Source of the DNA: Octopus sinensis
Lineage: Eukaryota
DNA length: 64,000 bases
NCBI RefSeq assembly: GCF_006345805.1
Contig: NC_043001.1
Coordinates: 43,586,001-43,650,000 of the forward strand
Direction: 5' to 3'
In this document: piece by piece, positions 3,019 to 28,839 of the stretch
Layout of the letters: every line of letters starts with the position of its first letter
Position numbering within the stretch: the first letter of the stretch is position 1
Notes under the pieces: model-generated
Told to the model about the DNA's origin: nothing
Databases searched by the model: none
The model's input: the letters and a program-made list of their open reading frames with translations, nothing else
Translations under genes and position numbers: made by a program

Positions 3019-3237
3019 GTGATTGTGCAAAACAGAATCTAAGTCCCAACATTGCAGCCAGGATCTCTGAAAATGGTAGTGATATCAACTGTGGAGACAA
3101 GCATGTGATTTTCATTTCAGATGTTCAAGCTGATGGCGTTTTGCTGGAACCTGTTCAAGAACACTGTGGCACCAATCATACATGTGACATAACACAAGTG
3201 TTTGGTGAATCATATATTGAGTACTATTGTGTTAACG
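3019..3237 (+). CDS. Host gene exon A: Cys-containing ectodomain module, divergent SUEL/rhamnose-binding-lectin-like
   Basis: Acceptor ttttacag|, donor |gttagt. 219 nt, phase 1-1, no stop. Encodes DCAKQNLSPNIAARISENGSDINCGDKHVIFISDVQADGVLLEPVQEHCGTNHTCDITQVFGESYIEYYCVN. Cys spacing, VFG and YxxYxC resemble SUEL by eye. Sequons NGS and NHT. Exon is well supported; domain call is tentative. Confidence 0.8.
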
Positions 3238-4002
3238 GTTAGTTGCATATTAACTTCCACTCAAGCATACACACACACACACACATGCATGCATGCACGC
3301 ACACAAGTTTTCATTGATTTACATCATATCTTCATAAATATTTGTTGGTACCAGAGTGAATGGCACCAGTGCTGGTGACACATAAGCACTGCACAGCCAA
3401 GGGATTTTTATGACACCTATTGAGTGGTGGTTTAATAGAATCGTCTGTCTGGACTCCTCTCTTCCTACTTCTCTCCATGGCTATGCATACTTAAGCTAGT
3501 AACCTGCCTCATTCTTGATTCCGAATTCCTTTTGCCAAGTCTGTCCGTAAACGATGTGATCCCAAGATAAGAAATCTTGAACTTTAATTCACCCCGTATC
3601 TCTATTTATTATTATTTATTATGATATCATATTCTGAGCCCCCTAGTCGCCACTCTGTTTACTATTTCAGCCTCGCCTCGTTTTTGCATATTCTGTATAA
3701 TTCATTAGTTATCGTTATAGATATTTAGATCTATCTCCCTTACAGGGTGATCGAATTGGCCGCCGATTCTTCGCGGCGCGCCCGCCCTACCCACCCCTCC
3801 AACACCACCACACCACCCCCTCCACACCACCACACCACCCCCTCAACACCACCACCACCACCCCCTCCAACACCACCACCACCACCCCCTCCAACACCAC
3901 CACCCCCTCCAACACCACCCCACCACCACCACACCACCACCACCAATACCGGATATCTCTATTTTGCTCCAACTATACCGGATGTCGTTTCTCCCACCAC
4001 AT

Positions 4003-4606
4003 TATAGGTGTCTACTCTTTGAACCCCCCTTCAATACGCTATTTCACCATGCATTACCCCTCTCTCGATATCCTACGTTCTACTTGCTAGAACCTGTCCT
4101 CTGAACCACCCATCCCACTGGTGCTCCCCTATATTTCTGCCCCCCCACCACCACCATTATAGGTGTCTACTCTTTGAACCCCCCTCTTCAATACGCTATT
4201 CACCATGCATTACCCCTTTCGATCCTACGTTCTACTTGCCTAGAACTGTCCTCTGAACACCCCTCCACTGGTGCTCCCCTATATTTCTGCACCCCCCCAC
4301 CACCTATAGGTGTCTACTCTTTGAACCCCCCTCTTCAATACGCTATTTCACCATGCATTACCCCTCTCTCGATATCCTACGTTCTACTTGCCTAGAACCG
4401 TCCTCAGAACCACCCTTCCACTGGTGCTCCGCTATATCTGCACCCCCCCACCACCATATAGGTGTCTACTCTTTGAACCCCCCTCTTCAATACGCTATTT
4501 CACCATGCATTACCCCTCTCTCGATTTCCTACGTTCTACTTGCCTAGAACCTGTCCTCTGAACCACCCCTCCACTGGTGCTCCCCTATATTTCTGCACCC
4601 CCCCCC
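4003..4606. repeat. Tandem repeat, four copies of a ~150-bp unit
   Basis: Units start with tataggtgtctactctttgaacccc at 4003, 4158, 4305 and 4457. High identity. Preceded by a C/A-rich (ccaccac)-type tract at ~3790-3945. Confidence 0.95.
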
Positions 4607-4855
4607 ATAAAAAGCACCATCCGAACGTGGCCGATGCCAGACCCCTCTGGCACCTGTGCAGGTGGCACGTAAAAACACCCACTACACTCGCGGAGTGGTT
4701 GGCGTTAGGAAGGGCATCCAGCTGTAGAAACACTGCCAGACTAGACTGGAGCCTGGGGCAGTCCCGAGCTCCCCAGACCCCGGTCGAAACCGTCCAACCC
4801 GTGCTAGCGCGGAAAACGGACGTTAAACGATGATGATGATGATGATGATGATGAT
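4607..4855 (+). mobile_element. 5'-truncated 3' UTR of RTE-type LINE (or dependent SINE) with (GAT)n tail
   Basis: Matches the 3' end of the RTE copy at 21475-22632 (aggaagggcatcc ... gttaaacgatgatgat). Related fragments at about 40270-40510, 46420-46670, 48125-48660(-), 52000-52260(-), 61650-61835(-) and 62490-62700(-). Confidence 0.8.
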
Positions 4856-5182
4856 TAGAGTGTTAGACGAGATGCTTTGCAGCATTTGATCGCAACCCTT
4901 TGTGTCCTGAGTTAAAATCCAACTGAATTCAACATTGTCATTCATCCTTTTTGAGTTGATAAAATGAAGTAGCAGCCAGCTAATCAATCACCTGGGGTAG
5001 CCTAGAATTCTTCAAGCAAAAGACCATGGCTGAGAATCTCAAATAAATATTCTTAGTGCTACTTGCTCTTTAATCCTTTTATTACGCTATTTCTGTTGAA
5101 ATATACTGCCATAATACCTTTGTTTTAATTAATTATTAAAATAATTAAAAAAAATTTACTAAAATTACTGTGTCATTATTAA

Positions 5183-5402
5183 CCCTTTTGTTACTGTATT
5201 TATTTTGAGATGCTCTGTGTTTCTTTCAATTATTTTAAATATAACAAAGAATTTAGTAAAATAACTTAGTTATCATTAAGTTAGTGTTAGGAACATAAAT
5301 TGTGACTAAGGTTTGGTGGAATATTTTAATTCAAAACTTATGAAAACAAGACATTTTACCACAAAGCCAGAGCCAGTTTTGGCCGGGTTAGTAACAAAAG
5401 GG
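5183..5402. mobile_element. piggyBac-like MITE
   Basis: TTAA followed by cccttttgttac ... gtaacaaaaggg TIRs. Right TTAA is degenerate. Confidence 0.6.
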
Positions 5403-5659
5403 TGACACTTAAAATATAAATTAGTATGAAATTTTTAATGGAGGGCTTTTAATATGGATCACTTTAAAAGATGAAGTTTTTATCATAGAACGAAGGTCAG
5501 TCTCATGTAGGTCAGTATCAAATGAATTAAAGGTTGATAATGACATAAACTCCAACAACCTCAGTATTTCTATGAGATGTAGTGACTCAGGTATCATTAG
5601 TCTTGCAAAGACTCTAATGATTCTACAAATCTGAACCAAATCTGATAATAATAATAATG

Positions 5660-5700
<41 letters not shown>

Positions 5701-5724
5701 TGACCAGATAATAATAATAATAAT

Positions 5725-6968
5725 GAACTGACCAAAATAGATAGGAAAACGAGAAAAATAATGACAGAATCTAGGATGCATCACCCAAAATCTGACATAG
5801 AAAGACTATATATACAACGTATAGAAGGTGGTAGAGGCCTTATACAGCTGGAAAACTACTATAAAATAACCACCATAGGACTGCAAAAATATCTACTTCA
5901 GAAGGAAGGAAAACTGATCTAGATAGCGGCAAAACACGAGCAAAACAAAAAACTGTTCTCAGTATTTAAGGAAGCTGACAAATACAAACAAGAAATCATA
6001 CCACCTAATAAACATGAAGAAGAAGAAGAAGATGAAGAAACAACAAAAGCTATAAAACAAATGAAATCCAAACTAAAAATAGAACAGCAACGAACCATGA
6101 TAAAACGATGGCAAGAAAAGCCCCTTCATGGTAAATACTGGACTAAACTAAACGCAAAAGAAATAGACAAAGAAAAATCCCAGCAATGGTTGAGAAGCTC
6201 AGGACTCAAAGCAGAAACAGGGATTTTTAATTGCAGCACAAGACCAAAGCCTCCCCACCAGAAATTACCAAAAACATGTAATGAAAAGAAATATTACAAG
6301 TAACTGCAGAATATGTGGAGATGGACAAGAAACAATAAATCATATTATCTCTAGCTGCCCAGTCCTGGCTAAGAAGGAATATATTCACAGACATGACAGA
6401 GTTGGAACCTACATACATTGGAAGCTATGCCAACATTATGGAATAACAACAGAAAAAAGATGGTATAGGCACACACCAGAAAAGGTCACAGAAAACGAGA
6501 AAGCAACCATACTCTGGGATATGCCGATACACACAGATAGAGAAATTAAGGCCAACAGACCAGATATAGTTGTCAGAGATCACGAAGAAAAAAAATGCTT
6601 TCTAATTGATGTATCAATACCGGCTGATGACAACGTGTCTCTAAAAGAAATGGAGAAACTCTCAAAATACAAAGACCTGGAAATAGAGGTAACTAGAATG
6701 TGGAATCTGAAAACAGAAACAATTCCTATCATAGTAGGTGCATTAGGCATGATAAAAAAATATTCAGACAAATACATAACAAAAACACCAGGACTTAAGA
6801 ATACATATAACATACAGAAAATTGCACTACTAGGCACTGCACACATCCTACGCAGAACACTTTCCATACAATAACCATCAGAGCATCACAACAAATCACA
6901 GCACATACCCAAGGCACACAGAGCTGTGCTCGGTAGTGAAGTGAAAGCACGCTATAAAAATAAAACTA

Positions 6969-6970
<2 letters not shown>
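5725..6970 (+). mobile_element. Dong/R4-clade non-LTR retrotransposon, 5'-truncated and frameshifted
   Basis: RT thumb (RMHHPKSDIERLY), CCHC knuckle CRICGDGQETINHIISSC and restriction-like endonuclease motifs (RHD, NRPDIV, LIDVSIP, KYKDL). Flanked on both sides by (TAA)n. Confidence 0.92.
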
Positions 6971-7017
<47 letters not shown>

Positions 7018-7050
7018 TAATAATAATAATAATAATAATAATGATAATAA

Positions 7051-10000
7051 TCTAACCAAAACATGAAAATAATTGGTAAAATCCGGCTTGCACTTAAGGA
7101 TATAATTTCAGTTAATGATGTTGATATCACAAACCTCAACCACCTATACTATGCATCCGCGAAAATCTCAACGATCCTATGTGGTGTAAAGATTAGAAAA
7201 CGGCAACAGTCCCACAAAAAGCCTTCTTGGCAAGAGCGTCTGCAACAACAAATTAAAATATTTAGATCTGACATTGAATATTTGAAAAACCTTAAGGCTC
7301 ACAAGATTACCAAACCTACAAAAACCCAAAAATTACTGAAAAAATACAATATGAAAACTATACTTGATATTGATGCCACCATAGAAACCATCAAACAAAA
7401 GGTATCTGCCAAAGCTGCCCGCATAGCGAGGTATGAAAAGCGTGTTAGATTTTTCAAGGACAACAACATGTTCAAAAATAACACCAAGAATTTTTACAGG
7501 AAGATAGGAAAAACAGCGTTTACTGCAGGGTCTGTACCATCAAAAGAAGAAGTGCAGAGATTTTGGAATAAAATCTGGGCAGAAGAAAAAAAACACACAA
7601 CGAAAAGGCCCCCTGGATTGACAGAATATCTACAGAACTGGACCCCTAAGAAGAGCAAAAGTGGGAGGGTGTCAAGGTAGAAGATATAAGATCTGCTCTC
7701 AGGAGGTCAAGCAAATGGAAGTCTCCAGGAAAGGATAAAATTCCTAACTTCTGGCTGAATGCCTTCCCAGAGAGCCATGAACTGCTAACAGAACTGTACA
7801 ATGATGTTTTGCAACACCCTAGTAGGATGCCTCCTTGGCTAGTTAATGGGTTAACATTCCTGCTTCCAAAAAGTGAAGAAACAAATGAACCAAAAAACTA
7901 TAGACCCATAACCTGCTTAACAACTATGTACAAAACACTAACATCTGTCCTGACGGAATATACCTATAGTTTTTTAACAGACAGCAGCATATTCCCTAAT
8001 GAACAGAAAGGATGTAAACGTGGATCCTACGGCTGTAAAGACCAACTACTCATCAATAAGATGATCTTAGAAGATTGTCACAAACGACACAAAAACTTAT
8101 CAATAGCCTGGATAGACTATAAAAAGGCTTTTGATAGCCTACCACATAGCTGGATTAGGAAATGCCTTGAAATGTATAAGATAGCACCAACTCTGCAAAA
8201 CTTCTTGACTGTAAGTATGAGATCATGGAGAACCACACTAACTCTGAACAGTGACAGTGAATCCCTAAATGCTGGTGATGTAAAAATTTCGTGTGACATT
8301 TTCCAGGGTGACTCACTGTCACCACTCCTCTTTTGTTTATCCTTAATACCTCTCTCAAAGCTGCTCAATGATGCGCAGTACGGGTATAAAATGTTTGATA
8401 AAAATATAAATCATCTCGTTTACATGGATGATTTAAAGCTTTTTGCAAAAAATGATCAACAACTTAAGGGCTTACTAGCGATAGTCAAACAATTCAGTGA
8501 CGACATCAGAATGCAATTCGGCCTCGATAAATGTGCAAAGGCTACCTTTATCAAAGGAAAAATGACAGAAACATCTAACGTTAACCTTGACCAACAGAAT
8601 GTCATAAAAGAACTAGACCCAGCGGAGAGCTACAAGTACCTAGGGATAATTGAAGGGAACGGAATAAGGCATTCAGAGATGAAGGAAAGGATCAGGAGAG
8701 AATGCTATCGAAGAGTGAGAGCAATACTCAAGACAGAGCTGAATGCAAGAAACAGGATCGAAGCAATCAATGCATTAGCTATACCAGTCGTGACTTACAG
8801 TTTCAATATTGTTAACTGGTCAATTACTGAAATATGTCAGCTCGACAGAAAAATAAGGAAACTGTTGACAATGCATAGAATGCACCACCCTAAGGCAGAT
8901 ACAGAACGACTCTATCTGCCAAGAAAAGAGGGAGGTCGTGGTCTTTTGCAACTGGCAATAACAATGAAGATTGCTACAATTGGCCTAGACACCTACCTGA
9001 AAAACTCTGAGGACTGGATGTTAAAACTTGTCTCAAAACATGAAAACAAGAAAGCATCATACTCAGTCACAAAACAGGCAAAGGAATATCTAAGTGAATT
9101 CCGAATACAACCAATTTCGGAATTAGAGATAGATATACAAGAAACAAGCACAGAAAAAGCTAGGCGCATGAAAACCCGTGCCAAAACTGCGGCCTTAGAT
9201 ATTCTGAATAATAAATGGCAAGAAAAACCTCTCTATGGCAAATACCCAAAGAGAGCGAATAATGCAGATATCGACAAAGCCCTGACCCATCAATGGCTAA
9301 TGGCCTCTGGCTTAAAATCTGAAACAGAGGGGTTTATCATAGCAGCTCAAGATCAATGCCTACCAACAAGAAACTACCAGGCCAACATATTAAAGATCAG
9401 AAGCAGTCCAACGTGTCGTGTATGCAAGCAACAAAATGAAACCATTGACCATGTGGTCTCCAAGTGCAGTCTTCTAGCGCCTACAGAGTATCTCAACAGG
9501 CACGATAGAGCTGCACAATATATTCACTGGGTAATCTGTAAAAACCTGGATTTGCCCCATGAAAAAAACTGGTGGGAACACAAACCACCCCCAGTGCTTG
9601 AAAATGACCACATCTCACTCCTCTGGAACTTCACCATTCAAACTGACAGGAAGATAGATGCAAATAGGCCAGACATCATATTGAAAAACTTCAAACAAAG
9701 AACATGCCTCCTCATTGATATGACTGTCCCAATCGATATAAACGTATCTGTCAAGACCTACCAAAAACTGAGCAAATATAAAGATCTTGAAATAGAAATC
9801 AGCAAAATGTGGAAGCTGAAGACTAAAACAATACCTGTTGTCATAGGTGCCCTGGGAATGATAGCAAAAGGGGCTGATAGCTACCTAACTCAGATACCAG
9901 GAAACCCAAAAATGGCAGAAGTTCAAAAGATAGTGCTCATGGGAACTGCTCATATCCTACGCAAAATACTCTCTATGTAATCTCAAGGTTTAAAACAAAC

Positions 10001-10197
10001 ATAATTTTCGGTTTAAAAAAAAAAAAAAAAAAAAAAACTTTTTTTTTTAGACATTCATTAGTACAACATCCCCACCCCCCAAATATATGGCACACTAGGC
10101 ATAACAACAACATGAACTTCCAACCCTGTTGTCTCTTGAGGTCTCTGGGTGAGACTGGGAGCCAACTTGTACAAATATAAAGCAAAAGTCAAACATA

Positions 10198-10200
<3 letters not shown>
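7051..10200 (+). mobile_element. Dong/R4-clade non-LTR retrotransposon (RT + CCHC + RLE), 5'-truncated, near-intact coding region
   Basis: ORFs 7063-7680 and 7809-9980. RT motifs YRPITCL, WIDYKKAFDS, FQGDSLSPLLF, YMDDLKL, YKYLG. CRVCKQQNETIDHVVSKC and NRPDII/LIDMTVP/KYKDL. Ends in a (TAA)n tail at ~10200. Confidence 0.96.
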
Positions 10201-10266
<66 letters not shown>

Positions 10267-10284
10267 GGGCAGCATGTGGGAGGT

Positions 10285-10496
10285 GGGTATGAGATGATTA
10301 CATCAACTCCAGGGTTCAACTGGTACTTATTTTATTGACCCTGAAAGGACAAAAGGCAAAATCCTGAAAGGACAAAAGGCAAAGGATGAAAGGCGAAGTT
10401 AACCTTGGTGGAATTTGAACTCAGAATGTAAAGATGGATGAAATGCTACTAAGCATTTTTCCTGACATGCTAATGATTCTGCCAGCTCACCACCTT
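10285..10496 (-). mobile_element. tRNA-derived SINE with Nin/Deu-like core
   Basis: Minus strand gagctggcagaatc ... ttctgagttcaaattcc ... ctttcatccttt ... aataagtaccag. Other copies at about 4855-4985, 10600-10800(-), 11250-11445(-), 12470-12680, 23385-23500, 27075-27260, 52505-52690 and 63740-63900(-). Confidence 0.8.
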
Positions 10497-10518
10497 AATA
10501 ATAATAATAATAATAATG

Positions 10519-10588
<70 letters not shown>

Positions 10589-10806
10589 TGCTTCAAATTT
10601 TTACACAAGGCCACAATTTAGGAGAAGAGGGGGTTTAGTTGATTACATTGACCTCAGTGCTCAACCAGTACTTATTTCATTAATCTGAAAATGATGAAAC
10701 ACAATCAGCCTCAGCAGAATTTGAACTCAGAATGTAAAGCCAGAAGAAATGCCATTAAGCTTTTTGTCCGACATGCTAACAATTCTGCCAACTCACTGCT
10801 TTAATG

Positions 10807-10869
<63 letters not shown>

Positions 10870-10870
<1 letters not shown>

Positions 10871-11225
10871 CACTGAGGGAGTGTAAAACTCTGCCAAGGC
10901 AAGACCAACATCCTCTCATCAATTAGCCAGAGATGATTTTTAAAATGAGAATATCTGAAATAAACTTGACTGCTCACACAAACGAGAATACTAAAAATGA
11001 ACCCAACTGCTCTGAAAAATTAAGTAAAAAAACAGGAAAAATAATCCAGAATCCTTGTCTGGTACTGGATCGATCCCAAAATCTAATCAGTTCATGCCAG
11101 TTACGAGCTCAAACATACCTGAAAGTTTCATTCGAATTCATCCAATGGTTCTTGAGATATCTTGTCCACGGACAAACGAACATGACTGAAAACAATACCT
11201 TCACCTTCGCTAATGTGGAGGTAAT
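10870..11225 (+). mobile_element. Non-autonomous Helentron-associated (HINE/DINE-like) element
   Basis: gatcccaaaatctaatcagttc and aagtttcattcgaattcatcc motifs, plus a 3' hairpin-type end accttc...ggaggtaat. Truncated second copy at ~12050-12175. Confidence 0.55.
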
Positions 11226-11624
11226 AATGATTTCAGATTTTTCCACAAGGGCAGAAATTTTGGGGGAGGGGATGAGTCGATTACATCGATCTCCAGTGTT
11301 TCACTGCTACTTAATTTGTCAACCCCAAAAAGGATGAAAAGCAAAGTCGACCTCAGCAGAATTTGAACTCAGAATATAGTGACAGGCAAAATACTGCTAT
11401 GCATTTTGCCTGGTGCACTAATGATTCTGCCAGTGCACCACCTTAACAACAACAACAACAACAACAATAATAATCATGGTTTCAAATTTTGCCACTAGGC
11501 CAGCAGTTTCAGAGAGGGGCCAAAGTCGGTTGGTATTCATTGTTTGTGTTTGCCCTCCACCATTGCTTGATAATTAGTGCTGGCTTGTTTATTATTATTA
11601 TCATAATAATAATAATAATGATGA

Positions 11625-13657: not shown

Positions 13658-13975
13658 AATCTTTAATCCTGGGTTGTGAAGAAATTAAATCAAAGCACCA
13701 AATAATGAAAGAGGATCTTCATGTGCAATGCTACAAGAATACACAACACAAGTTCAAAGATTCAATATATCAGTGTGGCATAATTCCTAACAGTTTTGCT
13801 AATAACATTTGGCTAATACTTCAAAACCAAAGGATTCATGTAAAAACATGCAAGGACTGTCATACAGACATGCATCCTTACTATCAGTATAACATTCCTA
13901 ATAAAAATATTGCAGATGGTTATTTACAATCAATTTTCTATGATTGTGACAAAGTATTTTGGTTCTTACATGTTA
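13658..13975 (+). CDS. Host gene exon B: second Cys-containing ectodomain module (divergent SUEL-like)
   Basis: Acceptor atttcag|, donor |gtaagt. 318 nt, phase 1-1, open. Encodes ESLILGCEEIKSKHQIMKEDLHVQCYK...YQCG...TCKDC...GYLQSIFYDCDKVFWFLHV (ORF 13705-14013 frame). LHVQC and YLxxxxYxC recall the SUEL termini. Confidence 0.75.
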
Positions 13976-16085: not shown

Positions 16086-16310
16086 ATACTGATGAGTGTG
16101 AAGGAATTTTCGAAGAATTCTTTTTGAAGACAAATTCTGGTAATCCAAAGTTTAATGGAAATGAAACAGTTGAAGAGAACATTACAGGTAGCTACCCAAC
16201 AGAAATTGAAACCATTTCTCATTATGTTGACACCACTTCCTTCTTGCCTTCCCAAGAAGTATCTTCTCTTCCCGGTTTCCACAATGTTGATAAAAGGATG
16301 TTTCCACGAG
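16086..16310 (+). CDS. Host gene exon C: Ser/Thr/acidic juxtamembrane stalk
   Basis: Acceptor tttcatttcaaag|, donor |gtaaga. 225 nt, phase 1-1, open (ORF 16061-16336 frame). Encodes TDECEG...NGNETVEENITGSYPTEIETISHYVDTTSFLPSQEVSS..., with sequons NET and NIT. Confidence 0.78.
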
Positions 16311-16908: not shown

Positions 16909-18134
16909 CTGGGTCATCCCATAAATAATGCGGTTTTTTCAATAGCATGAACTAAAAGTTGGAGGAGGACATGATAAACTACCTACATCAACTTATTACA
17001 AAAGCAGGTAGTAATTTTAACTTCCCTTATTCTTGGTGCAAGTTTTGAAAAGTGCAGTTCGATTTTAACAGTTATTTTTTTAAAGCTATAATGGAAGTGA
17101 CAAAGGAGCATATTAAAGTATATTTTGCTTTATGAGTTCAATAAAGGCAACAATGCAACGGAAAGTGCAAGGAATATTAATACAGTATATGGGGACTGGA
17201 CAATAAGTGTAAGCCAGTGTCAATGGTTGTTCCAGAAATTCTGAGTAGGTAACTACAGCCTAGAAGATGAGCCTCATCCTGGAAGACCTGTATAACTCGA
17301 TGAGGATGTCCTGCAAAACGTGGTGGAACAAAATCCCATCATAACTGTTGAGGAACTAGCAGAGAAGCTTGGATTTGGTCATTCAACCATTCATCAACCC
17401 TTGTGTGCCATCGGAAAAGTCAGCAAATTGGGTCAATAGGTTCCTCACAAACTTTCCGAGTTTAATCGAGTGCAGAGAGTGAATGTGTGCTCTTCTTTGC
17501 TGTTATGTCTCACAAATGAACCTTTTTTGAACTGAATAGTGACTGGTGATGAGAAATGGGTTCTCTATAAAAATGTCAAGTGCCGAAGACAGAAAGGAGA
17601 AAAATCGGCACCCCAGGCTAAAGAAGGTCTTCGGAAAGGTTTAGTCCACTTTGAACTTTTAAACCCAAACCAAACAATAACAAAAGAGATCTACTGTGAG
17701 CAGCTTAAGCAGCTTAAATCAGTGCTAGAAGAAAAACGACCATCTTCGGTTTCAAGACAAAAGGTGTTCTTCCATCAGGATAATGCTTGGTCACATACTG
17801 TGAGGATGATATTCCAAAGGCTGGAGCAGTTTGAATGGGAAACAATGCCCCATCCACCATATTTGCCAGACATTGCTCCATCTGATTATCATTTATTTTG
17901 CAGTCTTCAAAATCATTTGGACAGAAAAAATATGGATTCTGTAGATGAGGTCAGAACAGTGCTAGAGGATTATTTTTCATCACAGACAAGTGAATTTTGG
18001 AAGAGGGGATAGATGGAAGAGCATTGTAGAAAATGAAGGAGAGTATATTTTAGATTAAAAAAGAACCTTTGTTTTTCTTAATTTTGAAAAATGAAAGAAG
18101 TATAAAAAACTGCATTATTTATGGAATGATCCAG
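16909..18134 (+). mobile_element. Full-length but defective mariner transposon (D,D34D)
   Basis: ~30-bp TIRs (ctgggtcatcccataaataatgcggtttttt / aaaaaactgcattatttatggaatgatccag) with TA on both sides. VTGDEKW, FHQDNA and APSDYHLF motifs. In-frame stops and frameshifts. Confidence 0.95.
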
Positions 18135-20141: not shown

Positions 20142-20223
20142 ATATGTATATATATATGTATGTATATATATATATGTAATATATATATGTATATATATAT
20201 ATGTATGTATATATATATGTATA

Positions 20224-20260
<37 letters not shown>

Positions 20261-20279
20261 GTATATATATATGTATATA

Positions 20280-20328
<49 letters not shown>

Positions 20329-20504
20329 TATTATATGTATATATATATATTATATATAATATATATGTATATATATATATGTATATAATAATAATAATAA
20401 TAATAACAATAACAATAATAACAATAACAATAACAATAATAATAATAATAATAACAATAACAATAACGATAATAATAATAACAATAACAATAACAATAAC
20501 AATA

Positions 20505-20536
<32 letters not shown>

Positions 20537-20550
20537 TTAATAATAATAAT
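20050..20550. repeat. Compound microsatellite (AT/ATGT then AAT/AACAAT)
   Basis: Read directly from the sequence. Confidence 0.95.
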
Positions 20551-20552
20551 AA

Positions 20553-20835
20553 TAGTAATCCATGGATGAAATTTATAGATATTTTAATGCATCACTATGT
20601 GTGTTTCCACAAATCACATATTTCTTTCAATCATAGTCCGTATTCCTGGGGTGATTACAGTACAGTCCATAGTATCCCTGGACATCAGGTGGATCATGTT
20701 CATATGCTAATTTCCTCAGATGATATGGCCATCACTCCAGGAATATGGACTATGATTGTAAGAAACATGTGATTTGTGGAAAAATGCACAGCAATGCATT
20801 AAAAAATTTCATAAATTCCATCCATGGATTATTAT
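20553..20835. mobile_element. Fold-back/MITE-like element with ~100-bp TIRs (short copy)
   Basis: Arms 20557-20655 and 20731-20830 are imperfect reverse complements (aatccatggatg...catagtcc.tattcc). Same family as 58490-58940. Confidence 0.8.
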
Positions 20836-21064
20836 TACTATTATTACTATTATATTTATCCTACATTATATTGGCACAACCCCAAAAAACTGCTATTGCC
20901 AGTTGGTATCATTAGGCTGTAGCTGGCATAATAAAATAAGGACTTTTATATGCATATTCAAAAAGATTACCTGTAAACCAACTTAGTGACAATTGAATTT
21001 TTCCTTTATGGTATCACATTGCACTTAGTTGTTTATATTAATTTTATATACATACATACATACA

Positions 21065-21161
<97 letters not shown>

Positions 21162-21369
21162 CCATACATATCTTACATCTATTTCCTCCACCTCACTCTC
21201 TATTTATATCACATCGAAACTAACTATGACTTAAGTTTTCCTCTCACACCATCTCCAATGAAGGGATATTATTATTAATTAATATTCTAGAAACAGCTGT
21301 AAGACCTTCTATCTATAAATGCTCTAATATCTATACAGCCTTGGTTTTTTTATCTCATTACGCAAAAAA

Positions 21370-21405
<36 letters not shown>

Positions 21406-21474
21406 TGTTTGTGGGTATCTATGTGTATATATATGTATATGAATATATGTGTGTGTGTGTGCATATATATCTAT

Positions 21475-22632
21475 GTCTAAGTTTGTTTTTGTGTGCGGCA
21501 AATGCTCAGGAGCAATAAACACTGAAAATGTGCAGAAAACAGCTTCCATCACATCCCAGGGGTAAAAAACTACAAGTAGTTAACAGCTTCCGTTACCTAG
21601 GTGACCAAGTCAGTAGCAGGGATGGATACTCTGAAAATGTAGCTGCTAGAATAAGAATAGCCTGGGCAAAGTTCAGAGAGCTCTTAACTCTGCTGGTGAC
21701 AAAGGGCTTCTTGCTCAGAGTAAAAGGTAGACTGTATGATGCATGTGTACGAACAGCCATGCTACACGGCAGTAAAACATGGGCTGTGACTGCTGAGGAC
21801 ATGCGTAAGCTTGCAAGGAATGAAGCCAGTATGCTCCACTGAATGTGGTCTGTCAGTGTGCATGCACAACAGAGTGTAAGCACCCTGAGAGAAAAAGTTG
21901 GAGATAAGAAGCATCGGATGTGGTGTGCAAGAGAGACAACTGCACTGGTATGGTCATGTGTTGAGAATGGATGAGGACAGCTTTGTGAAAAAGTGTCACA
22001 CCCTAGCGGTTGAAAGAACCTGTGGAAGAGGTAACCCAGGAAGACCTGGGATGAGGTGGTGAAGCATGACCTTCGAACATTGGGCCTCATTGAGGCAATG
22101 ACAAGTGACTGAGACCTTTGGAGATATGCTGTGCTTGAGAAGACTCGGCAAGCCAAGTGAAACCATAACCGTGGCCTATGCTATTGCAGTATAACCAGCC
22201 CATTTAAAAGTACCCTTCAATCATTGGGCAATAAACTGTGCTTGTGAAGACATGTTGAGGCAAGTGAAATCGTTGTCAAGACCAATGACAGTACTGCCTG
22301 ATTGGCACCTGTGCCAGTGGCACATTAAAATCACCATTCGAGTGTGATCATTGCCAGTGCTGCCTGACTGGCTCCTGTGCCAGTGACATGTACAAAGCAC
22401 CATCTGAGCATGGTCAATGCCAGTACCACCTGACCGGCCCTCATGCCAGGGGCATGTAAAAAGCACACACTGCACTCTCAGAGTGGCTGGCATTAGGAAG
22501 GGCATCCAACTGTAGACACTTTGCTAGATTGGATTGGAGCCTGGTGCAGTCTTCTGGCTTGCCAGCCCTCAGTCAAACCATCCAACCCATAACTGCATGG
22601 AAAGCTGATGTTAAACGATGATGATGATGATG
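21475..22632 (+). mobile_element. RTE-clade LINE, 5'-truncated, with 3' UTR and (GAT)n tail
   Basis: FRYLGD...ARIRIAWAKFRELL...LYDACVRTAMLHGSKTW (RT C-terminal region), then a 3' UTR with internal short repeats and gttaaacgatgatgat. Confidence 0.9.
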
Positions 22633-24680
22633 TGTATGTATTAATCAATGAAATTTCAATTTAGTCTGATTTTCATTTTTTATTATTTCCACTTTTCCAA
22701 TTTTTCCAATTTTACAATATTGGAGTAATCTAGTACTTTCATGTGTTACACAATCATTAGGTTTATGTAGTGACAGTTGTGCTCCACAATTAACAACTGT
22801 GGTGAAATGGTTAGATTTGTCCTTTAAATACCTGCCAATGAGCTCCAGCAGGCTGAATGTTACGACCTGTATTTTAACCAATTAGTATGTAGCTTAGATG
22901 TCATGATTTGGTGAGCATGCCAACTAAGTCAGTATGTGGCTTAGATGTCATTATTTGGTGAATGCACCAACTTGGTTAGCATTTATCCTGGTTTTTTCGA
23001 CAAGATGTTTTATCTTAATTGGTGTGCAGCTAGGACATCACAGTTTGGTGTGTACGTCAAAGATTCTTTACTTTGACTGCACCTAAAGGAATAATTGTTT
23101 GATAATATTTTGGAATGTTGTAAACAATGTTCCTGTTTTCATAGAATTCTATTGTTACAGTTTTTCAGAAATTTTACATTTCAATCAAGTCAGTGTTGAT
23201 ATGATTAACACTACTACTATCCTCACCACCACCTTTATTATTATTATTGTTAGTGGTGGCAGTGGTAGTATTATTATTATCATCATTACAATTATCACTA
23301 TTACTATAATTGTTATTATACTGTTATTAACTGTTATTAGTATTAACGGTTATTACTATAAGTGTTATTAGCAGTATTTCACTCATCGCTATGTTCTGAG
23401 TTCAAGTTCCTTCGACTTTGCCTTTCATCCTTTCAGGGTCAATAAATTAAGTACCAGTGAAACACTGGGGTCGATGTACTCAACTAGTCTCCTCTCCCCA
23501 ATAGTAGAAAGGACCATTATTGTCCATTTAAAACAGGTTTGAATTTACCAATAAAATTCTTTACTCTGACTTTTCTCTTTACTTCACCTGTGTAAATGTC
23601 TTCTACTGTAGCCTTAGACAGACCAATACCTTGTGGCTGAATTTGGCTGACGGAAACTGCAGGAAACCTGTCATACACACATACACTCACATACTAACGA
23701 AAAATATATATATCTGTGAGTGTGTCTGTGTATGTGTATATATGTGTGTGTGTGTGCGCTATGTATATGTGTGTGTATGTGTGTGAAGGCACGTAGCTCA
23801 GTGGTTAGAGTGTTGGGCTCACAATCATGAAGTAGTAAGTTTGATTCCCAGACTGGACTGTGTGTTGTGTTTTTGAGCAAGACACCCTATTTCCCATTGC
23901 TCCAGTTCACTCAACTGTAGAAATGAGTTGTGACATCACTGATGCCAAACTGTATCAGCCTTTGCTTTTTCCTTGGATAACACTGGTGGTGTGGAAAGGG
24001 GAGGCTGGTGTGCATGGGTGACTTCTGGTTTTCCATAAGCAAACTTGCTGGGAATTGTGAGCAAATGTTGAAGACAGTGACAAAAACATACACAACACAA
24101 ATGTAAATATGAAAACAAAATGAATTTACAATAGACAAACAAAATAAGGCTGTGCAGCTCTAAGATAAGATAAGTGTAAGGGTAATGCAAAGGAAAGGAA
24201 AGGAAAATGTCCGATGGAACTGGAAACAAAAAAGGGGACAAATGGAAAAACAGAATGGTGAAAAAAAAAAAAACCAAACCATGCTGAAAGTAAAGAAGGA
24301 AGTGAGAGAAATGTGACAGAATGAATTAGTGGTCAGGAAATATAGGTAGATATGTATAGAACTTCTGATAAGCATGTGTGTGATAGCTGACAATTTAGCA
24401 TGTTTTTTTTAGAATTTTGCTCTTACATACTAAAGAAGAAAGACTTATTAATTTACTCATAGGTTGTGAAGTGAAAGCCAAACTCCAACTGTGCTTTGCA
24501 TTTCATCTATTTGGGTTTTACAAAATAACTTTCTTGCATGTATTAGGTTTGAGTTAATCAACTACTCTACTTCCTTACACATAATCTGTGGTCTATCATC
24601 TTTGCTAAAACATGAACAGCATTTTCTTTTATATATTTTTTTAACGTATATCTATATATATATATATTTTTTTTTTTCAG

Positions 24681-24765
24681 AAATTGTCAATTACTTAACA
24701 ATTGGAATTGCTGGTGGACTAACACTTATCACTTTAACTGTGTGTTTTATTGTCATTTTGAGAAG
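24681..24765 (+). CDS. Host gene exon D: transmembrane helix
   Basis: Acceptor tttttttcag|, donor |gttagt. 85 nt, phase 1-2. Encodes EIVNYLTIGIAGGLTLITLTVCFIVILR(R): a hydrophobic helix followed by basic stop-transfer residues (RRPKQK after splicing). Confidence 0.9.
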
Positions 24766-24850
24766 GTTAGTTTCAATTTGCATTTGCTTTTTTTCAATAA
24801 GGTACATGAAGTGTGATGTGAAGCTTGTCTGAACTTCTGATAAGCTGGGT

Positions 24851-25396
24851 ACAATTCCAAACCTTATCTTTAGAACCTTTATATAGTGCCTCAACTTATA
24901 CCTCATTCTTCTTAAGCCTGCTTTGTTCCTACTTCAAAGTGGAGCAATTATGTGAAGTAGCAGAAAAAAAAAAGTCTACCTAAGTTGTCAGAAGAAATGA
25001 TTGAAGATGAAAATCGAACAGAATGTCCAGTTGAGTTTGATGATAAGCTCCTTGAGGCATTACTTGAAGAAAATCCTGCATTATCAGTTGAAGGATTGGC
25101 AATAAAATTTAGTTCAAACCATGCAACTGTTCATTGTCATCTTCAACAACTTGGAATGATTCTTAAACTTGAAAAATGGGTGCCTCATGAATTGTCTGAA
25201 AGCAACCACAAATACCGAGTTGACATTCTGTTGATTTTCATCTTCAATCATTTCTTCTGACAACTTAGGTAGACTTTTTTTTTTCTGCTACTTCACATAA
25301 TTGCTCCACTTTGAAGTAGGAACAAAGCAGGCTTAAGAAGAATGAGGTATAAGTTGAGGCACTATATAAAGGTTCTAAAGATAAGGTTTGGAATTG
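24851..25396. repeat. Long inverted duplication (~175-bp arms, ~195-bp spacer)
   Basis: ~24851-25027 is the reverse complement of ~25222-25396, apart from a 1-nt indel near the inner end. The right arm is bracketed by the 8-bp direct repeat gttgacat (25219-25226, 25396-25403). Confidence 0.93.
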
Positions 25397-26112
25397 TTGA
25401 CATCTGCTCTTCTTTTCATTCTCGTGAATTCATTTCACCCTTTTTGGATGGACTTGTGACTGGTGACGAAAAATGGATGTTCTATCGAAATGTTAAACAT
25501 TGTAAACAGTGGTTTGGTAAAAGGGAAAAATCTCAACCACAACCGAGAAGGGAACTTATGGGGAAAAGGTTCTTTTCTCTATCTGGTGGGATTGCAAAGG
25601 AGTAATTCACTTTGAATTGCTACCACCTAATGCAACAATCAATGCTCAAGTCTACTGTCAGCAATTAGAGCATTTGAACCAAGCTTTGAAGAAAAAAAAA
25701 CCCGCTTTAGTGAATAGAAAAGGAGTGATGTTTCATCAGGACAATGTGCGATCCCACACTGCAAAGATTATATCACAGAAGATCGAAGAGCTTGTTGGGA
25801 AAAAATTCCTCATCCACCTTATTCTCCCGACCTTGCTCCTTCAGACTACCATTTGTTTTGTAGTTTACAGAATCATTTGGGTGACATAACTTTTGCAAGC
25901 CAGGAGGAGGTCGAAACTGACATTTCAGAGTTCTTTGCTTTGAAAGCAAAAGAGCTTTACAATGATGGGATTAAAAAGCTTGTAAATAGATGGAAGGAAG
26001 TCGTAGATAATCAGGGAAAGCACATTGATGATTAAATTTCAATTAAATATAACATTTGATCACTTGTTTTCTTTATTCAAAATTTGGACAGAATTTATAG
26101 GATGACCTGATA
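25000..26112 (+). mobile_element. Defective mariner (5'-truncated, interrupted by the inverted insert)
   Basis: EDENRTECPVEFDD, KWVPHEL, VTGDEKW and FHQDN motifs across broken frames. Right TIR ggatgacctga-TA. Confidence 0.92.
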
Positions 26113-26920
26113 GATATATACATATATACATATGTACGATGGGCTTCTTTCAGTTTCTGTCTACCTAATCCACTCACAAGACTCTGGTCGGCCTGAAGCT
26201 ATAGCAGAAGACACTTGCTCAAGTTGTCATACAGTGGGACTGAACCCTGAACCATGTGGTTGTGAAGCAAGCTTCTTACCACACAGCCACGTCTGTGCCT
26301 ATATATGATTACTTGAAATCTGAAAATTGCCCTGCCCATTCTAACTTGGAAATAAGATATGATGTGTGTGTGTGTGTGCACGCGTGTGTGTACACGTGTA
26401 TTAGTGGAGGTGTGTGGCTTAGTGATTAGGGCAATTAGCTCACAATCATAAGGCTGTGAGTTCAATTCTCTGCAGCACGTTGTGTCCTTGAAGGAGACAC
26501 TTTATTTTACATAGCTTCAGTCCACTCAGCTGGAAAAATGAGTAATACCAGTAGTTCAAAGGTCTGGCCCAGTCACATTCAGTGTCATGCTGAATCTTTC
26601 TGAAAACTTTGTTAAGGGTTTGCATGTCTGTGGAGTGCCACTTGCATATTAACTTCATGAGTAGGCCATTCCTTCGATTGAATCAACTGGAACCTGTGTC
26701 GAGATAACTGACAGAGTGCCAGATATATATATATGTATATATAATTGAAAAATGTTGTAGAAAACACAGTTTTTTCAATTATCTATTCATACACAACAGA
26801 AGCCCAGATGCAAACCTGGAAATACCTATAATACTACTACTCTATAGCACTGGGTGAAATCTGAAGGTGGACAAGCTTTATACTGTATTCTACTACATTT
26901 TTAACAGAATATACCATGAC

Positions 26921-26952
<32 letters not shown>

Positions 26953-26956
26953 CATG

Positions 26957-27000
<44 letters not shown>

Positions 27001-27795
27001 TATATGCAAACAGGAAAATAGAGCTCAAAACATGAATATATTTGTTTTCCTTATTATTAACAATTGATGAGGATGTGAGCTGGCAAAAATGCTTAGCAGC
27101 ATTTCTTCTGACTTAACATTCTGAGTTCAAATGCCATCAGGGATTAACTTTGCTTTTCATTCTTTTGAGAGTCAATAAAATAAGTACCAGTTGAGTACTG
27201 GAGTCGATGTAATCAACTTGACTTCCTCCCAAAATTACTGGCCTTGCACAAAAAATTTGAAAACCATTATTAACAACTGACAGATGTTACAGAATAACCC
27301 GAGAATTGCTTTTTGTGCATTAGTGCTTATCAATAAGTGTCAATGCATGAATCTCTTTGCCATTGAGCCATTCTGTAACTTCTGCCAATGATCAATAATA
27401 AATGTGTGTGTGTGTGTGTGTGCGTGTGCAAGCTTTTTCTTTGTTAGTTTCATTATTGAGTGATAAGATTTCCTAAAATTAAAACAGCTGTGTAGAGTAT
27501 CATTGAAGTTATTTCGGAATAGAATTACATTGGATATAATTTGGTATTGGATCAGGATGTAGAACTACAAATGACATATTCTCAGAAAAACAGCTGCTAA
27601 GAAAAAAACCACTGGGCTTTACATTTATCAGTCAACAGTAAACCATTGATAGGTTCCTTCACTCTGCAGCGTAGGGAAAGATAGGGAACCTAGATATACC
27701 ACTTTTCTGATTGGTACATTTTCACAATTTAATCTGCTGAGCCATGAATCCATCTAACGTAATTTATCCATCTTTATATGTCTATTGTATGTGTG

Positions 27796-27875
<80 letters not shown>

Positions 27876-27932
27876 AATAACCATTTTAATTGACATTATG
27901 TTTAACTTTCTCTTAATTTTGATTTATTTCAG

Positions 27933-28839
27933 ACCAAAGCAAAAATCTGTGGCAGCTCCACCATCTTCAGCAACTGGTTTATATGGTTGTACTCACCTTC
28001 CTGAGAATTTTGATGCTGCTTCACCAGAGGAAGAGAATACTTATTTTACTGTTGAAGCTGATGATGATGAAATTATTCAGAAAAAAGTTGAGGAAAACAC
28101 TTACAATTGTATTGATGAAGTTAAAGGGTCAAACCAGGATCCTGTTGTTGAGCGCTATAGTAAATTAAGGAGTCCAAGGACAGTGTTAGAGAAGATACCC
28201 TCTTCGACTATCAAAGACAACTATGATCAAATTGTTGAAGAAATGGTTCAGGGTAGAATGAATTCCACCTGTCCCAGAACAAAGAAAGCAAAGCAGAATG
28301 GATCTCTGAGAAAAACAGGTAGCCTTCATCGGCAGGCATCAAAAGATTCAACAGCAAAGCCAGGTTCTCCAGAGGTTAATGAGGCTATAGTATATAAAGA
28401 AGTTCCATGTTATCAATGTTCTTCTCTGTCTCCAGAATATTTTGACCGTGCCCTTCCATCAGCTCCTCTGATGGAAAGTGACAGTGCATCAGAGCCTGAT
28501 GCGATTTATGAGAGAGTTGATGATTTACTCACTTCTGATCAGGACAGGAACAACAGTCAGGTTAATGACATTTATGAAACTGTTACAGAGCCAAATGAAT
28601 TAAAAAGTCAGTATTCCACATTCCAAAGGCAAACAGATGGTAAAGTTGGTGAAAATAACTCACTAAACAACTCTTTAAGAGATAAAAAACCTGCAATTGC
28701 CAATGGTAATCTTCAGCCACCAAGAATTTATGACCATATCTCTGACAAATGGAACGACACAGATAAGCCACTTCATCTCATTCCATCTGATGAATATGTA
28801 TATACACAGTTACAAGATGACACTACACTAGGGTCATAA
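27933..28839 (+). CDS. Host gene terminal exon E: ~300-aa Tyr-motif-rich cytoplasmic tail
   Basis: Acceptor atttatttcag|. Phase 2 matches exon D (AG|A = Arg). 907 nt open to TAA (ORF 27778-28839). Non-repetitive sequence with motifs YFTV, YNCI, YSKL, YDQI, YKEV, YERV, YETV, YSTF, YDHI, YTQL. Confidence 0.92.

What the first reader, a model, noticed from the sequence alone, without database searches (positions are those of the whole stretch)
3019..28839. Five-exon gene for an unrecognised type I receptor with two divergent lectin-like modules, hidden among ~25 kb of repeats
Seen: five non-repetitive islands have canonical splice sites and phases 1-1, 1-1, 1-1, 1-2 and 2-stop, and join into one open frame of about 584 aa. 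It reads as Cys module, Cys module, S/T stalk, TM helix, long tail. N-glycosylation sequons lie on the extracellular side. The ORF track misses exon A entirely. Established: two SUEL/Gal-lectin domains plus a TM is the EVA-1/EVA1C architecture (Slit co-receptor; heparin/glycan binding), and SUEL lectins are pathogen-binding proteins in invertebrates. Inference: the modules are shortened and very divergent and the tail is much longer and more Tyr-rich than expected for EVA-1. This may be a lineage-specific glycan-sensing immune or neural receptor family.
Basis: partly seen in the sequence, partly recalled or inferred. Interest (0 to 1): 0.82.

Follow-up and report, generated by a model that had tools for sequence, protein, structure and literature searches.

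The report
Cephalopod-only orphan membrane receptor gene
The five exons are real and encode most of a single-pass membrane protein found only in octopuses, argonauts and cuttlefish, but its outer part is not a recognisable SUEL lectin or EVA-1 relative, and the gene is already in databases as an "uncharacterized protein".

Summary
Observation confirmed. Window exons 3019-3237, 13658-13975, 16086-16310, 24681-24765 and 27933-28839 (+ strand) all have AG/GT boundaries. Their phases are 1-1, 1-1, 1-1, 1-2 and 2-stop, and they join into 583 codons plus a stop. The window is Octopus sinensis CM016863.1, and the gene is RefSeq LOC115212129, "uncharacterized protein". Both O. sinensis models start at a Met in exon B and miss exon A. 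The O. bimaculoides, O. vulgaris and Argonauta models and a Sepia esculenta mRNA include it. A sixth exon, encoding the signal peptide, lies outside the window; in O. bimaculoides it is 72 kb upstream.

The type I topology, the S/T stalk, the TM helix and the long Tyr-rich tail hold. The "two SUEL lectin modules / EVA-1" reading does not. No ortholog has any Pfam hit. Module A resembles Gal_lectin only faintly (hhalign P=0.02) and lacks the YGR, DPC and KYL motifs. Module B does not resemble it, and the two modules are unrelated to each other. A profile search of 1.84 billion proteins found cephalopod relatives only. AlphaFold2 models were low-confidence, so the fold is unknown.

Most likely this is a coleoid-restricted receptor or adaptor that signals through eight or nine conserved tail tyrosines. 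One odd lead remains: a 34-residue motif in module B matches the start of alphacoronavirus spike S1 domain A (PDB E≈0.01).

The parts
3019..3237 (+). Exon A (phase 1-1), ectodomain module A: 72 codons, 5 family-invariant Cys and the motif INCGDxHVI...C..N..CD...YxEYYC. Absent from both O. sinensis RefSeq isoforms.
   Evidence: splice sites, frame. (tblastn by 4 orthologs, 1e-42 to 1.6e-8). (donor site and both phases conserved in a distant cephalopod). (present in the O. bimaculoides, O. vulgaris, Argonauta and Sepia proteins).
13658..13975 (+). Exon B (phase 1-1), ectodomain module B: 106 codons. The RefSeq O. sinensis models start at the in-frame ATG at 13705.
   Evidence: P0002 and P0007 start with MKEDLHVQCY.
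13726..13833 (+). 36-residue segment of module B (QCYK.TQ..F....CG.IPN.FANN.WLILQ) holding the family-invariant P, N, W, L, L. This is the segment that matches the N-terminal motif of alphacoronavirus spike S1 domain A.
   Evidence: PDB E=0.009-0.02. (not compositional). (hhalign Prob 80%, P=1.3e-5; 0 of 300 shuffles reach it). Coordinates.
16086..16310 (+). Exon C (phase 1-1): end of the Cys-rich region (DECEGIFEEFF helix), two sequons and the S/T-rich stalk.
16187..16309 (+). Alternatively spliced 41-aa S/T stalk (GSYPTEIETISHYVDTTSFLPSQEVSSLPGFHNVDKRMFPR). An internal donor ACAG|GTAGCT at 16187|16188 (phase 1) joins straight to exon D in isoform X2.
   Evidence: P0007, P0010 and P0009 read ...ENIT|EIVNYLT. 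(donor sequence). (coordinates).
24681..24765 (+). Exon D (phase 1-2): juxtamembrane residues, TM helix and RR stop-transfer.
24695..24760 (+). TM helix LTIGIAGGLTLITLTVCFIVIL. The core GIAGGLTL is invariant from octopus to cuttlefish.
   Evidence: invariant columns G291-L298. (highest hydropathy window)..
27933..28839 (+). Exon E (phase 2 to the stop): a 300-aa acidic, Ser/Thr-rich cytoplasmic tail. It has nine invariant Tyr, eight of them in conserved YxxPhi sites: YFTV 28042, YNCI 28102, YSKL 28156, YDQI 28222, YERV 28507, YETV 28573, YDHI 28729, YTQL 28801.
   Evidence: The tail alone is found in a further cephalopod genome (P0005).
7051..9977 (+). Context, not part of the gene product: a near-intact non-LTR retrotransposon ORF (776-aa stop-free frame with RVT_1 and zf-RVT) inside intron A-B. 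An older fragment lies at 5704-6871.
17101..18009 (+). Context: a mariner-type transposase relic in intron C-D. A second relic lies at 24961-26032 in intron D-E.
   Evidence: Transposase_1, 2.3e-10.

Best explanation
This is a genuine, expressed gene: five of its six coding exons lie in the window. It encodes a single-pass type I membrane glycoprotein restricted to coleoid cephalopods (octopus, argonaut, cuttlefish).

Architecture:
- a signal peptide, encoded by an exon outside the window;
- a beta-rich ectodomain of about 210 aa with 10 invariant Cys and no detectable family;
- an alternatively spliced S/T (mucin-like) stalk;
- a strongly conserved TM helix with a small-residue GxxGG face;
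- a roughly 300-aa acidic, probably disordered tail.

Most likely mechanism (inferred, not shown): it acts as a cell-surface receptor or transmembrane adaptor. The ectodomain binds an unknown ligand. The TM helix mediates self-association or pairing with a partner. The eight conserved acidic YxxPhi sites (E-E-N-T-Y, IYE[RT]V, IYDHI and others) are phosphorylated by Src/Syk-type kinases and recruit SH2-domain proteins.
For: Gene reality and structure: splice sites conserved in O. bimaculoides; exon A donor site and phases conserved in a distant species; Sepia esculenta RNA-seq contigs with the uninterrupted ORF, seen in many runs.

Identity: (100% match to O. sinensis LOC115212129; the window equals CM016863.1).

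Signal peptide, in phase with exon A.

Topology: one hydrophobic 22-mer followed by RRPKQK. The Cys and the conserved sequon lie on the N-terminal side.

Purifying selection: dN/dS is 0.43 overall, 0.49 for the ectodomain and 0.30 for the tail. Ten Cys, the TM core and nine tail Tyr are invariant at 28% overall identity.

Tail motifs: eight YxxPhi sites are conserved in all orthologs.

Lineage restriction: a profile search of 1.84 billion representative proteins found only 3 hits, all cephalopod. The word-index searches found 4 and 2.

That acidic YxxPhi sites are typical kinase-substrate and SH2-docking sites is established knowledge, not tested here.
Against: - No phosphorylation, ligand or expression pattern is known, and no paper mentions either LOC id.
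- There is no canonical ITAM, no conserved ITIM or ITSM, and no NPxY.
- YxxPhi is also the AP-2 endocytic sorting signal, so the tyrosines could serve trafficking instead.
- Both AlphaFold2 models were low-confidence (pLDDT 26 and 43). Foldseek found nothing with E<0.01. The ectodomain fold, and therefore any ligand class, is unknown.
- A dN/dS of about 0.4-0.7 in the ectodomain, based on few substitutions, indicates only moderate constraint.
- I could not examine any O. sinensis transcript.
Confidence: 0.55

Rival explanations
1. One reading: a divergent EVA-1/EVA1C-like receptor whose two extracellular modules are shortened SUEL (Gal_lectin) domains that bind glycans.
For: hhalign places module A colinearly on solved Gal_lectin domains: INCGDKHVIFIS on L.C..G..I.I, VQEHCGTNHTCDI on the helix-C.G...C.V segment, and YIEYYC on YLEV.Y.C. 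The score is above most shuffles (P=0.022; 11 of 300 shuffles reach it). Two Cys modules plus a TM is superficially the EVA-1 layout (my knowledge).
Against: No Pfam Gal_Lectin or EVA1/FAM176 hit in any ortholog or isolated module at E<=10. hhalign probability is only 1-2%. The alignment needs an 18-residue deletion that removes the YGR motif and two Cys, and DPC and KYL are absent. Module B gives P=0.3 against Gal_lectin, and A against B gives P=0.86. No Gal_lectin structure appears among the Foldseek hits, though the model was poor.
Confidence: 0.07
2. The ectodomain (exons A and B together, or module B) is a beta-sandwich related by descent to the N-terminal part of alphacoronavirus spike S1 domain A (a galectin-like fold). 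It would then be a cellular relative of a viral attachment domain.
For: The only PDB sequence hits of two ectodomain profiles are HCoV-NL63 spike, at E=0.009 and 0.02. The match covers the family-invariant P, N, W, L, L and two Cys. It is not compositional: 23.7 bits against at most 15.6 in 20,000 shuffles. The matched viral stretch is the conserved motif at the start of domain A in NL63, 229E and PEDV-type spikes. A profile-profile comparison gives Prob 80%, P=1.3e-5 over 34 columns, and 0 of 300 shuffles reach it.
Against: The comparison was made after the fact and covers only 34-79 residues. The full-length profile did not list the hit, and Pfam listed no coronavirus S1 family. Foldseek with the (poor) model found no spike. 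The viral CxxC is matched by only one Cys, and the second invariant Cys of the cephalopod motif aligns to a non-Cys. The similarity stops after the motif. There is no biological link between mammalian alphacoronaviruses and cephalopods. A shared short strand motif by convergence or chance is at least as likely.
Confidence: 0.1
3. The conserved YxxPhi motifs are clathrin-adaptor sorting signals. On this reading the protein is a constitutively cycling cargo, scavenger or adhesion receptor rather than a phosphotyrosine signalling scaffold.
For: Eight conserved YxxPhi sites. No canonical ITAM, ITIM or ITSM. A mucin-like, alternatively spliced stalk is common in adhesion and scavenger proteins (my knowledge).
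Against: One or two sorting signals normally suffice. Eight sites, each preceded by acidic residues and spread over 260 residues of otherwise poorly conserved tail, look more like kinase-substrate and SH2-docking sites. This is inference.
Confidence: 0.2
4. It is an annotation artefact or decaying pseudogene assembled from chance open frames among repeats.
For: The exons are short islands among transposon relics. The O. sinensis RefSeq models are incomplete.
Against: The frame is open and the splice sites are conserved in four or five species spanning octopods and a cuttlefish. A cuttlefish mRNA exists. dN/dS is below 1, and the Cys and Tyr are invariant.
Confidence: 0.02

Closest known systems
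RefSeq LOC115212129 (O. sinensis) / LOC106867862 (O. bimaculoides) / the Argonauta hians ortholog, all 'uncharacterized protein'
   Same: It is the same gene: 100% identity to XP isoform X1 over exons B-E, and 92% and 64% identity to the other two species.
   Different: Both O. sinensis isoforms (495 and 454 aa) start at a Met in exon B and lack the signal peptide and exon A. The window shows exon A intact at 3019-3237. No function, domain or paper is attached to any of these records.
EVA-1 / EVA1C (two SUEL/Gal_lectin domains, a TM and an EVA1/FAM176 tail); architecture from my knowledge
   Same: Type I topology; two Cys-containing extracellular exon modules ahead of a single TM helix.
   Different: No Gal_lectin and no EVA1/FAM176 domain is detectable. 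The modules are unrelated to each other. The tail is a 300-aa Tyr-rich acidic region with no Pfam match.
SUEL / L-rhamnose-binding lectin domain (Pfam Gal_Lectin; solved in 5h4s, 2zx0, 9vwi and latrophilin 2jx9/8djg)
   Same: Module A can be laid colinearly on the domain, keeping 4 of the 7 Cys positions and a C.G...C.[VI] segment.
   Different: Statistically insignificant (P about 0.02-0.04). The YGR segment is deleted, and DPC and KYL are absent. These are the motifs I recall as forming the sugar site. Module A is 49 residues against about 80.
Multi-phosphotyrosine single-pass receptors and transmembrane adaptors (for example nephrin YDxV sites, Draper/PEAR1, LAT/PAG-type adaptors); my knowledge, not tested
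   Same: A long disordered cytoplasmic tail studded with conserved acidic YxxPhi sites, including two YDx[IV] and two YEx[V].
   Different: No sequence relationship, a different ectodomain, and no ITAM, ITIM or NPxY. This is an analogy of mechanism only.
Alphacoronavirus spike S1 domain A, N-terminal motif (C.GY..N.F....G.IP..F.FNNWFLL)
   Same: A 34-column motif match that includes the family-invariant residues.
   Different: Short and borderline (PDB E about 0.01). The Cys pattern is only partly shared, there is no structural confirmation, and the organisms are unrelated.

Membership tests
SUEL / Gal_lectin (PF02140) | Significant match to the family HMM | tested here: not met
   hmmscan against Pfam at E<=10 on the whole protein, on modules A and B alone, and on 4 orthologs: no Gal_Lectin hit.
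SUEL / Gal_lectin (PF02140) | Profile-profile similarity to solved Gal_lectin domains | tested here: inconclusive
   Module A: hhalign score 15.7, P=0.022, Prob 2%, reached by 11 of 300 column shuffles; the alignment is colinear. Module B: P=0.3.
SUEL / Gal_lectin (PF02140) | Conserved YGR, DPC and KYL motifs and the full Cys framework | tested here: not met
   In the best alignment the YGR segment, with two Cys, falls in an 18-residue deletion. DPC is absent, and KYL is replaced by SYI, AYV or CEV. Four of 7 Cys positions are kept.
SUEL / Gal_lectin (PF02140) | The alpha/beta SUEL fold | tested here: inconclusive
   The AF2 ectodomain model has pLDDT 43 and pTM 0.38. Foldseek against the PDB found no hit with E<0.01 and no lectin in the top 50. 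The model is too poor to decide.
EVA-1 / EVA1C | Two tandem Gal_lectin domains | tested here: not met
   The modules are also unrelated to each other.
EVA-1 / EVA1C | Single-pass type I topology | tested here: met
   A signal peptide in orthologs and one TM helix followed by RR/KK.
EVA-1 / EVA1C | EVA1/FAM176-type C-terminal domain | tested here: not met
   No Pfam family matches the tail in any ortholog.
ITAM / ITIM immunoreceptors | Yxx[LI]-x6-12-Yxx[LI], or a conserved [ILVS]xYxx[ILV] or TxYxx[VI] | tested here: not met
   Regex scan of 4 orthologs: no ITAM, no ITSM, and ITIM-like hits that are not conserved in position.
Alphacoronavirus S1 domain A / galectin-like beta-sandwich | Sequence similarity beyond chance | tested here: inconclusive
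   PDB hmmsearch E=0.009 and 0.02. hhalign Prob 80%, P=1.3e-5 over 34 columns. The comparison is post hoc and short, and the full-length profile did not list the hit.
Alphacoronavirus S1 domain A / galectin-like beta-sandwich | Shared fold | tested here: inconclusive
   Foldseek of the low-confidence model against the PDB and BFVD found no spike.
Coleoid-cephalopod LOC115212129 family (the family this gene belongs to) | Full-length colinear similarity, with shared Cys, TM core and tail Tyr motifs | tested here: met
   Alignment A1: 64% mean column identity; ten ectodomain Cys, GIAGGLTL and nine Tyr are invariant.

The most novel reading that the evidence does not exclude
The ectodomain is either a previously undescribed extracellular fold confined to coleoid cephalopods, or a cellular relative of the N-terminal beta-sandwich of alphacoronavirus spike S1 domain A. 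The second reading is more striking. The shared 34-residue motif (C..[YT]....F....G.IP..F..NNW.LL) would then mark a common origin between a cephalopod receptor and a viral attachment domain.
Probability: 0.1. Interest if true: 0.8.

Novelty: new variant of a known kind. Interest (0 to 1): 0.36.

Why it matters
If the mechanism is right, this is a lineage-restricted cell-surface signalling receptor. It has been conserved since octopods and decapods split, yet it has no relative outside cephalopods and no recognisable domain. That makes it a candidate for cephalopod-specific neural, sensory or immune biology.

In practice, the work corrects the O. sinensis gene model, which lacks exon A and the signal peptide, and documents a stalk-skipping isoform. 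It also removes an attractive but unsupported lectin/EVA-1 label.

Such orphan membrane proteins are common in cephalopod genomes, so the gene is not surprising in itself. The weak spike-motif similarity would matter only if a structure confirms it.

Tried and rejected
- Searched the window for the signal-peptide exon with tblastn and with a 35-mer allowing 3 mismatches. Only noise came back, so the exon lies outside the window.
- Ran word-index homolog searches with the octopus model and with the cuttlefish protein: 4 and 2 hits, all cephalopod.
- Ran an exhaustive profile search of 1.84 billion representatives: 3 hits, all cephalopod fragments.
- Scanned Pfam with the whole protein, single modules and all orthologs: nothing above noise (PP1_bind, RCC1_2, Phage_RBD_prop and BAR_3, at E 0.03-0.3). 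I rejected these as chance.
- Searched PDB sequences with the full-length profile: only two chance-level hits.
- Ran AlphaFold2 on the full length (pLDDT 26) and on the ectodomain (pLDDT 43). Neither is usable. Foldseek against the PDB and BFVD returned only generic beta-sandwich noise (cyclic-nucleotide-binding and CUB domains), which I rejected.
- Tested modules A and B as internal repeats: rejected.
- Looked for paralogs in the window: none.
- Scanned Rfam over the window: nothing.
- Searched the literature for both LOC ids: no paper.

Full report
**What is there**

Stop-free stretches on the + strand and the flanking bases give five exons:
- A: 3019-3237
- B: 13658-13975
- C: 16086-16310
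- D: 24681-24765
- E: 27933-28839

Each exon follows a pyrimidine tract and an AG. Each of the first four is followed by GT (gttagt, gtaagt, gtaaga, gttagt). The phases are 1-1, 1-1, 1-1, 1-2 and 2-stop. The joined sequence reads 583 codons plus TAA.

**Identity**

The joined protein is 100% identical over exons B-E to Octopus sinensis XP isoform X1 of LOC115212129, "uncharacterized protein", 495 aa. It is 92% identical to O. bimaculoides LOC106867862 (612 aa) and 64% identical to the Argonauta hians ortholog (623 aa). It is 28% identical to a 625-aa protein from a Logan assembly.

The fetched O. sinensis locus matches the window at 35135 of 35135 bases. The window is therefore CM016863.1 from about 43,586,001.

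The 625-aa protein sits uninterrupted on a 2020-nt contig of run SRR31864755. That run is Sepia esculenta larval RNA-seq (PMC11917092). Near-identical variants occur on dozens of other such contigs. A spliced mRNA of this family therefore exists in a decapodiform.

**Gene structure across species**

- In O. bimaculoides the gene spans 90.7 kb.
- Its exon 1 (MDEEKKGDVLLGVLLLLFTFGLPTVVA + A|gtaag) ends in phase 1 and lies 72 kb upstream of exon A. This fits the phase-1 start of exon A in the window.
- No such exon is in the window.
- All splice dinucleotides of exons A-E are conserved in O. bimaculoides.
- A genomic contig of a distant cephalopod (ERR3431203) shows exon A bounded by ttttcag| and |gtaaat. 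The donor is at the same site and phase as in the window, and the acceptor is in the same phase one codon further from the first Cys.
- Both O. sinensis RefSeq isoforms begin at the ATG at 13705 in exon B. They lack exon A and the signal peptide.
- The O. vulgaris model CAI9722506.1 contains exon A but is fused to an upstream transposon-like ORF.
- Isoform X2 in three species joins ...ENIT directly to EIVNYLT. In the window this corresponds to an internal donor ACAG|GTAGCT at 16187|16188 and removes the 41-aa S/T stalk.

**Selection**

Between O. sinensis and O. bimaculoides, Nei-Gojobori dN/dS is as follows (counts are small):

| Region | dN/dS |
|---|---|
| Overall (44 nonsynonymous, 26 synonymous differences) | 0.43 |
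| Module A | 0.67 |
| Module B | 0.57 |
| Stalk | 0.29 |
| TM + tail | 0.30 |

At 28% overall identity, ten ectodomain Cys, the TM core GIAGGLTL and nine tail Tyr are invariant. The gene is constrained, and the ectodomain evolves fastest.

**Topology and features**

- One hydrophobic 22-mer, LTIGIAGGLTLITLTVCFIVIL, is followed by RRPKQK.
- Together with the signal peptide in orthologs, this gives type I topology.
- Sequons are not restricted to the outside: there are six on each side. Only the sequon in C.(T/N)N(H/N)(T/S)C is conserved as far as Sepia.
- The tail has no canonical ITAM, no conserved ITIM or ITSM and no NPxY.
- It has eight conserved YxxPhi sites in acidic contexts: YFTV, YNCI, YSKL, YDQI, YERV, YETV, YDHI and YTQL.

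**Test of the lectin / EVA-1 idea**

- Pfam scans at E<=10 of the whole protein, each module and four orthologs found no Gal_Lectin and no EVA1/FAM176. The only hits were chance-level.
- I baited the PDB with a made-up consensus and took nine real Gal_lectin domain sequences from the printed alignments.
- hhalign of a five-sequence module-A alignment against these gave score 15.7, P=0.022 and probability 2%. Eleven of 300 column shuffles do as well.
It needs an 18-residue deletion that removes YGR and two Cys, and DPC and KYL are missing.
- Module B gives P=0.3 against Gal_lectin. Module A against module B gives P=0.86, and BLASTP finds nothing.

Membership in the SUEL or EVA-1 families is therefore not supported. 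A very degenerate SUEL origin of module A cannot be excluded.

**How far the family reaches**

A profile of four orthologs, searched with HMMER against 1.84 billion representative proteins, found three hits:
- the O. sinensis protein itself;
- a 268-aa tail fragment from a cephalopod genome assembly;
- a 66-aa read-through of exon A.

The family appears confined to coleoid cephalopods.

**Fold**

- AlphaFold2 on the full length (4-sequence alignment) gave pLDDT 26.
- On the ectodomain alone it gave pLDDT 43 and pTM 0.38, mostly beta strands.
- Foldseek against the PDB and BFVD found nothing with E<0.01.

The fold is undetermined.

**An unexpected lead**

- The ectodomain profiles A3 and A2 each hit one kind of PDB sequence only: HCoV-NL63 spike, at E=0.009 and 0.02. 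The match runs over profile positions 58-136 against spike residues 153-231.
- It includes the family-invariant P, N, W, L, L and two Cys.
- Against 20,000 composition-preserving shuffles of the viral piece, the real order scores 23.7 bits against at most 15.6.
- The viral stretch holds the motif conserved at the very start of S1 domain A in NL63, 229E and PEDV-type spikes. That domain is described as galectin-like (PMC10630519).
- hhalign of the cephalopod ectodomain against a three-sequence alignment of the printed viral pieces gives probability 80%, P=1.3e-5 over 34 columns (window 13726-13833). The shuffle mean is 11.6 with a maximum of 21.9, against an observed score of 35.7.

This is far stronger than the SUEL signal, but it has clear weaknesses:
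- The comparison is post hoc and short.
- The full-length profile did not list the hit.
- The Cys pattern is only partly shared.
- No structural evidence backs it.

I rate true relatedness at about 10%.

**Surroundings**

- The introns hold a near-intact non-LTR retrotransposon (7051-9977; RVT_1 at 1.5e-26, plus zf-RVT), with an older fragment at 5704-6871.
- They also hold mariner relics (17101-18009 and 24961-26032), a 152-bp x4 tandem repeat (3993-4604) and many microsatellites.
- Downstream of the gene (29-64 kb) I found only transposon fragments and simple repeats. There is no second cellular gene, no paralog and no Rfam match.

**Verdict**

The gene model is right, and it improves on the O. 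sinensis annotation. The protein is a coleoid-restricted orphan type I membrane protein, most plausibly a receptor or adaptor that signals through tail tyrosines; this mechanism is inferred. The SUEL/EVA-1 label should be dropped. Novelty lies in the unassigned ectodomain, not in the existence of the gene.

Noticed in passing
window 16187-16310: An alternative 5' splice site inside exon C (ACAG|GTAGCT at 16187|16188, phase 1) removes the 41-aa S/T stalk. RefSeq isoform X2 uses it in O. sinensis and O. bimaculoides, and so does the O. vulgaris model.
   Followed up: yes
window 13705 (annotated start) versus 3019-3237: Both O. sinensis RefSeq isoforms (495 and 454 aa) start at an internal Met in exon B, so they lack the signal peptide and exon A. 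The O. vulgaris model CAI9722506.1 (821 aa) contains exon A but is fused at its N-terminus to a transposon-like ORF.
   Followed up: yes
window 13726-13833: A motif in module B matches the conserved N-terminal motif of alphacoronavirus spike S1 domain A (PDB E=0.009-0.02; hhalign Prob 80% over 34 columns). A PEDV paper (PMC8778753, on a novel neutralizing epitope of PEDV S1) contains the motif string; I did not open it.
   Followed up: partly
window 7051-9977 and 5704-6871: A near-intact non-LTR retrotransposon (209-aa ORF1-like frame plus a 776-aa RT frame with RVT_1 and zf-RVT) lies in the same orientation as the gene inside intron A-B. An older, related fragment sits just upstream. This insertion accounts for much of the difference in intron length from O. 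bimaculoides (10.4 kb against about 5 kb).
   Followed up: partly
window 14-304, 17101-18009, 24961-26032, 33866-34839 (-): At least four decayed mariner/Tc1-type transposase copies. They share the signature ...PHPPYSPDLAPSDYHLF...; two of them lie within introns of the gene.
   Followed up: partly
window 3791-4604: Directly after exon A there is a CCA-rich, Pro/Thr/His-coding microsatellite (3791-3945), followed by a 152-bp unit repeated 4 times at 91% identity (3993-4604).
   Followed up: no
window 26199-26465 (-), 29120-29420 (+), 46155-46436 (+), 50962-51216 (-) and others: A dispersed short repeat, probably a SINE, recurs on both strands. It is recognisable by the pseudo-translation ...GCVVSSLLTNHMVPGSVPL.G.LGKCLLLQ...
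   Followed up: no
window 29977-30197: A 39-bp unit repeated about five times in tandem (pseudo-translation ECVTLPFQKADVL) lies about 1.1 kb downstream of the stop codon, near the first AATAAA signals (29972, 30269). It may lie in or near the 3' UTR.
   Followed up: no
window 32126-32918, 37409-37801, 59616-60929: Further transposon fragments lie downstream of the gene: an RT fragment (RVT_1, 3.8e-10), a weak hAT dimerisation-domain fragment (E=0.0026), and a 239-aa RT-like frame next to a C-rich, GC-skewed block at 60-62 kb. No second cellular gene was recognised in 29-64 kb.
   Followed up: partly
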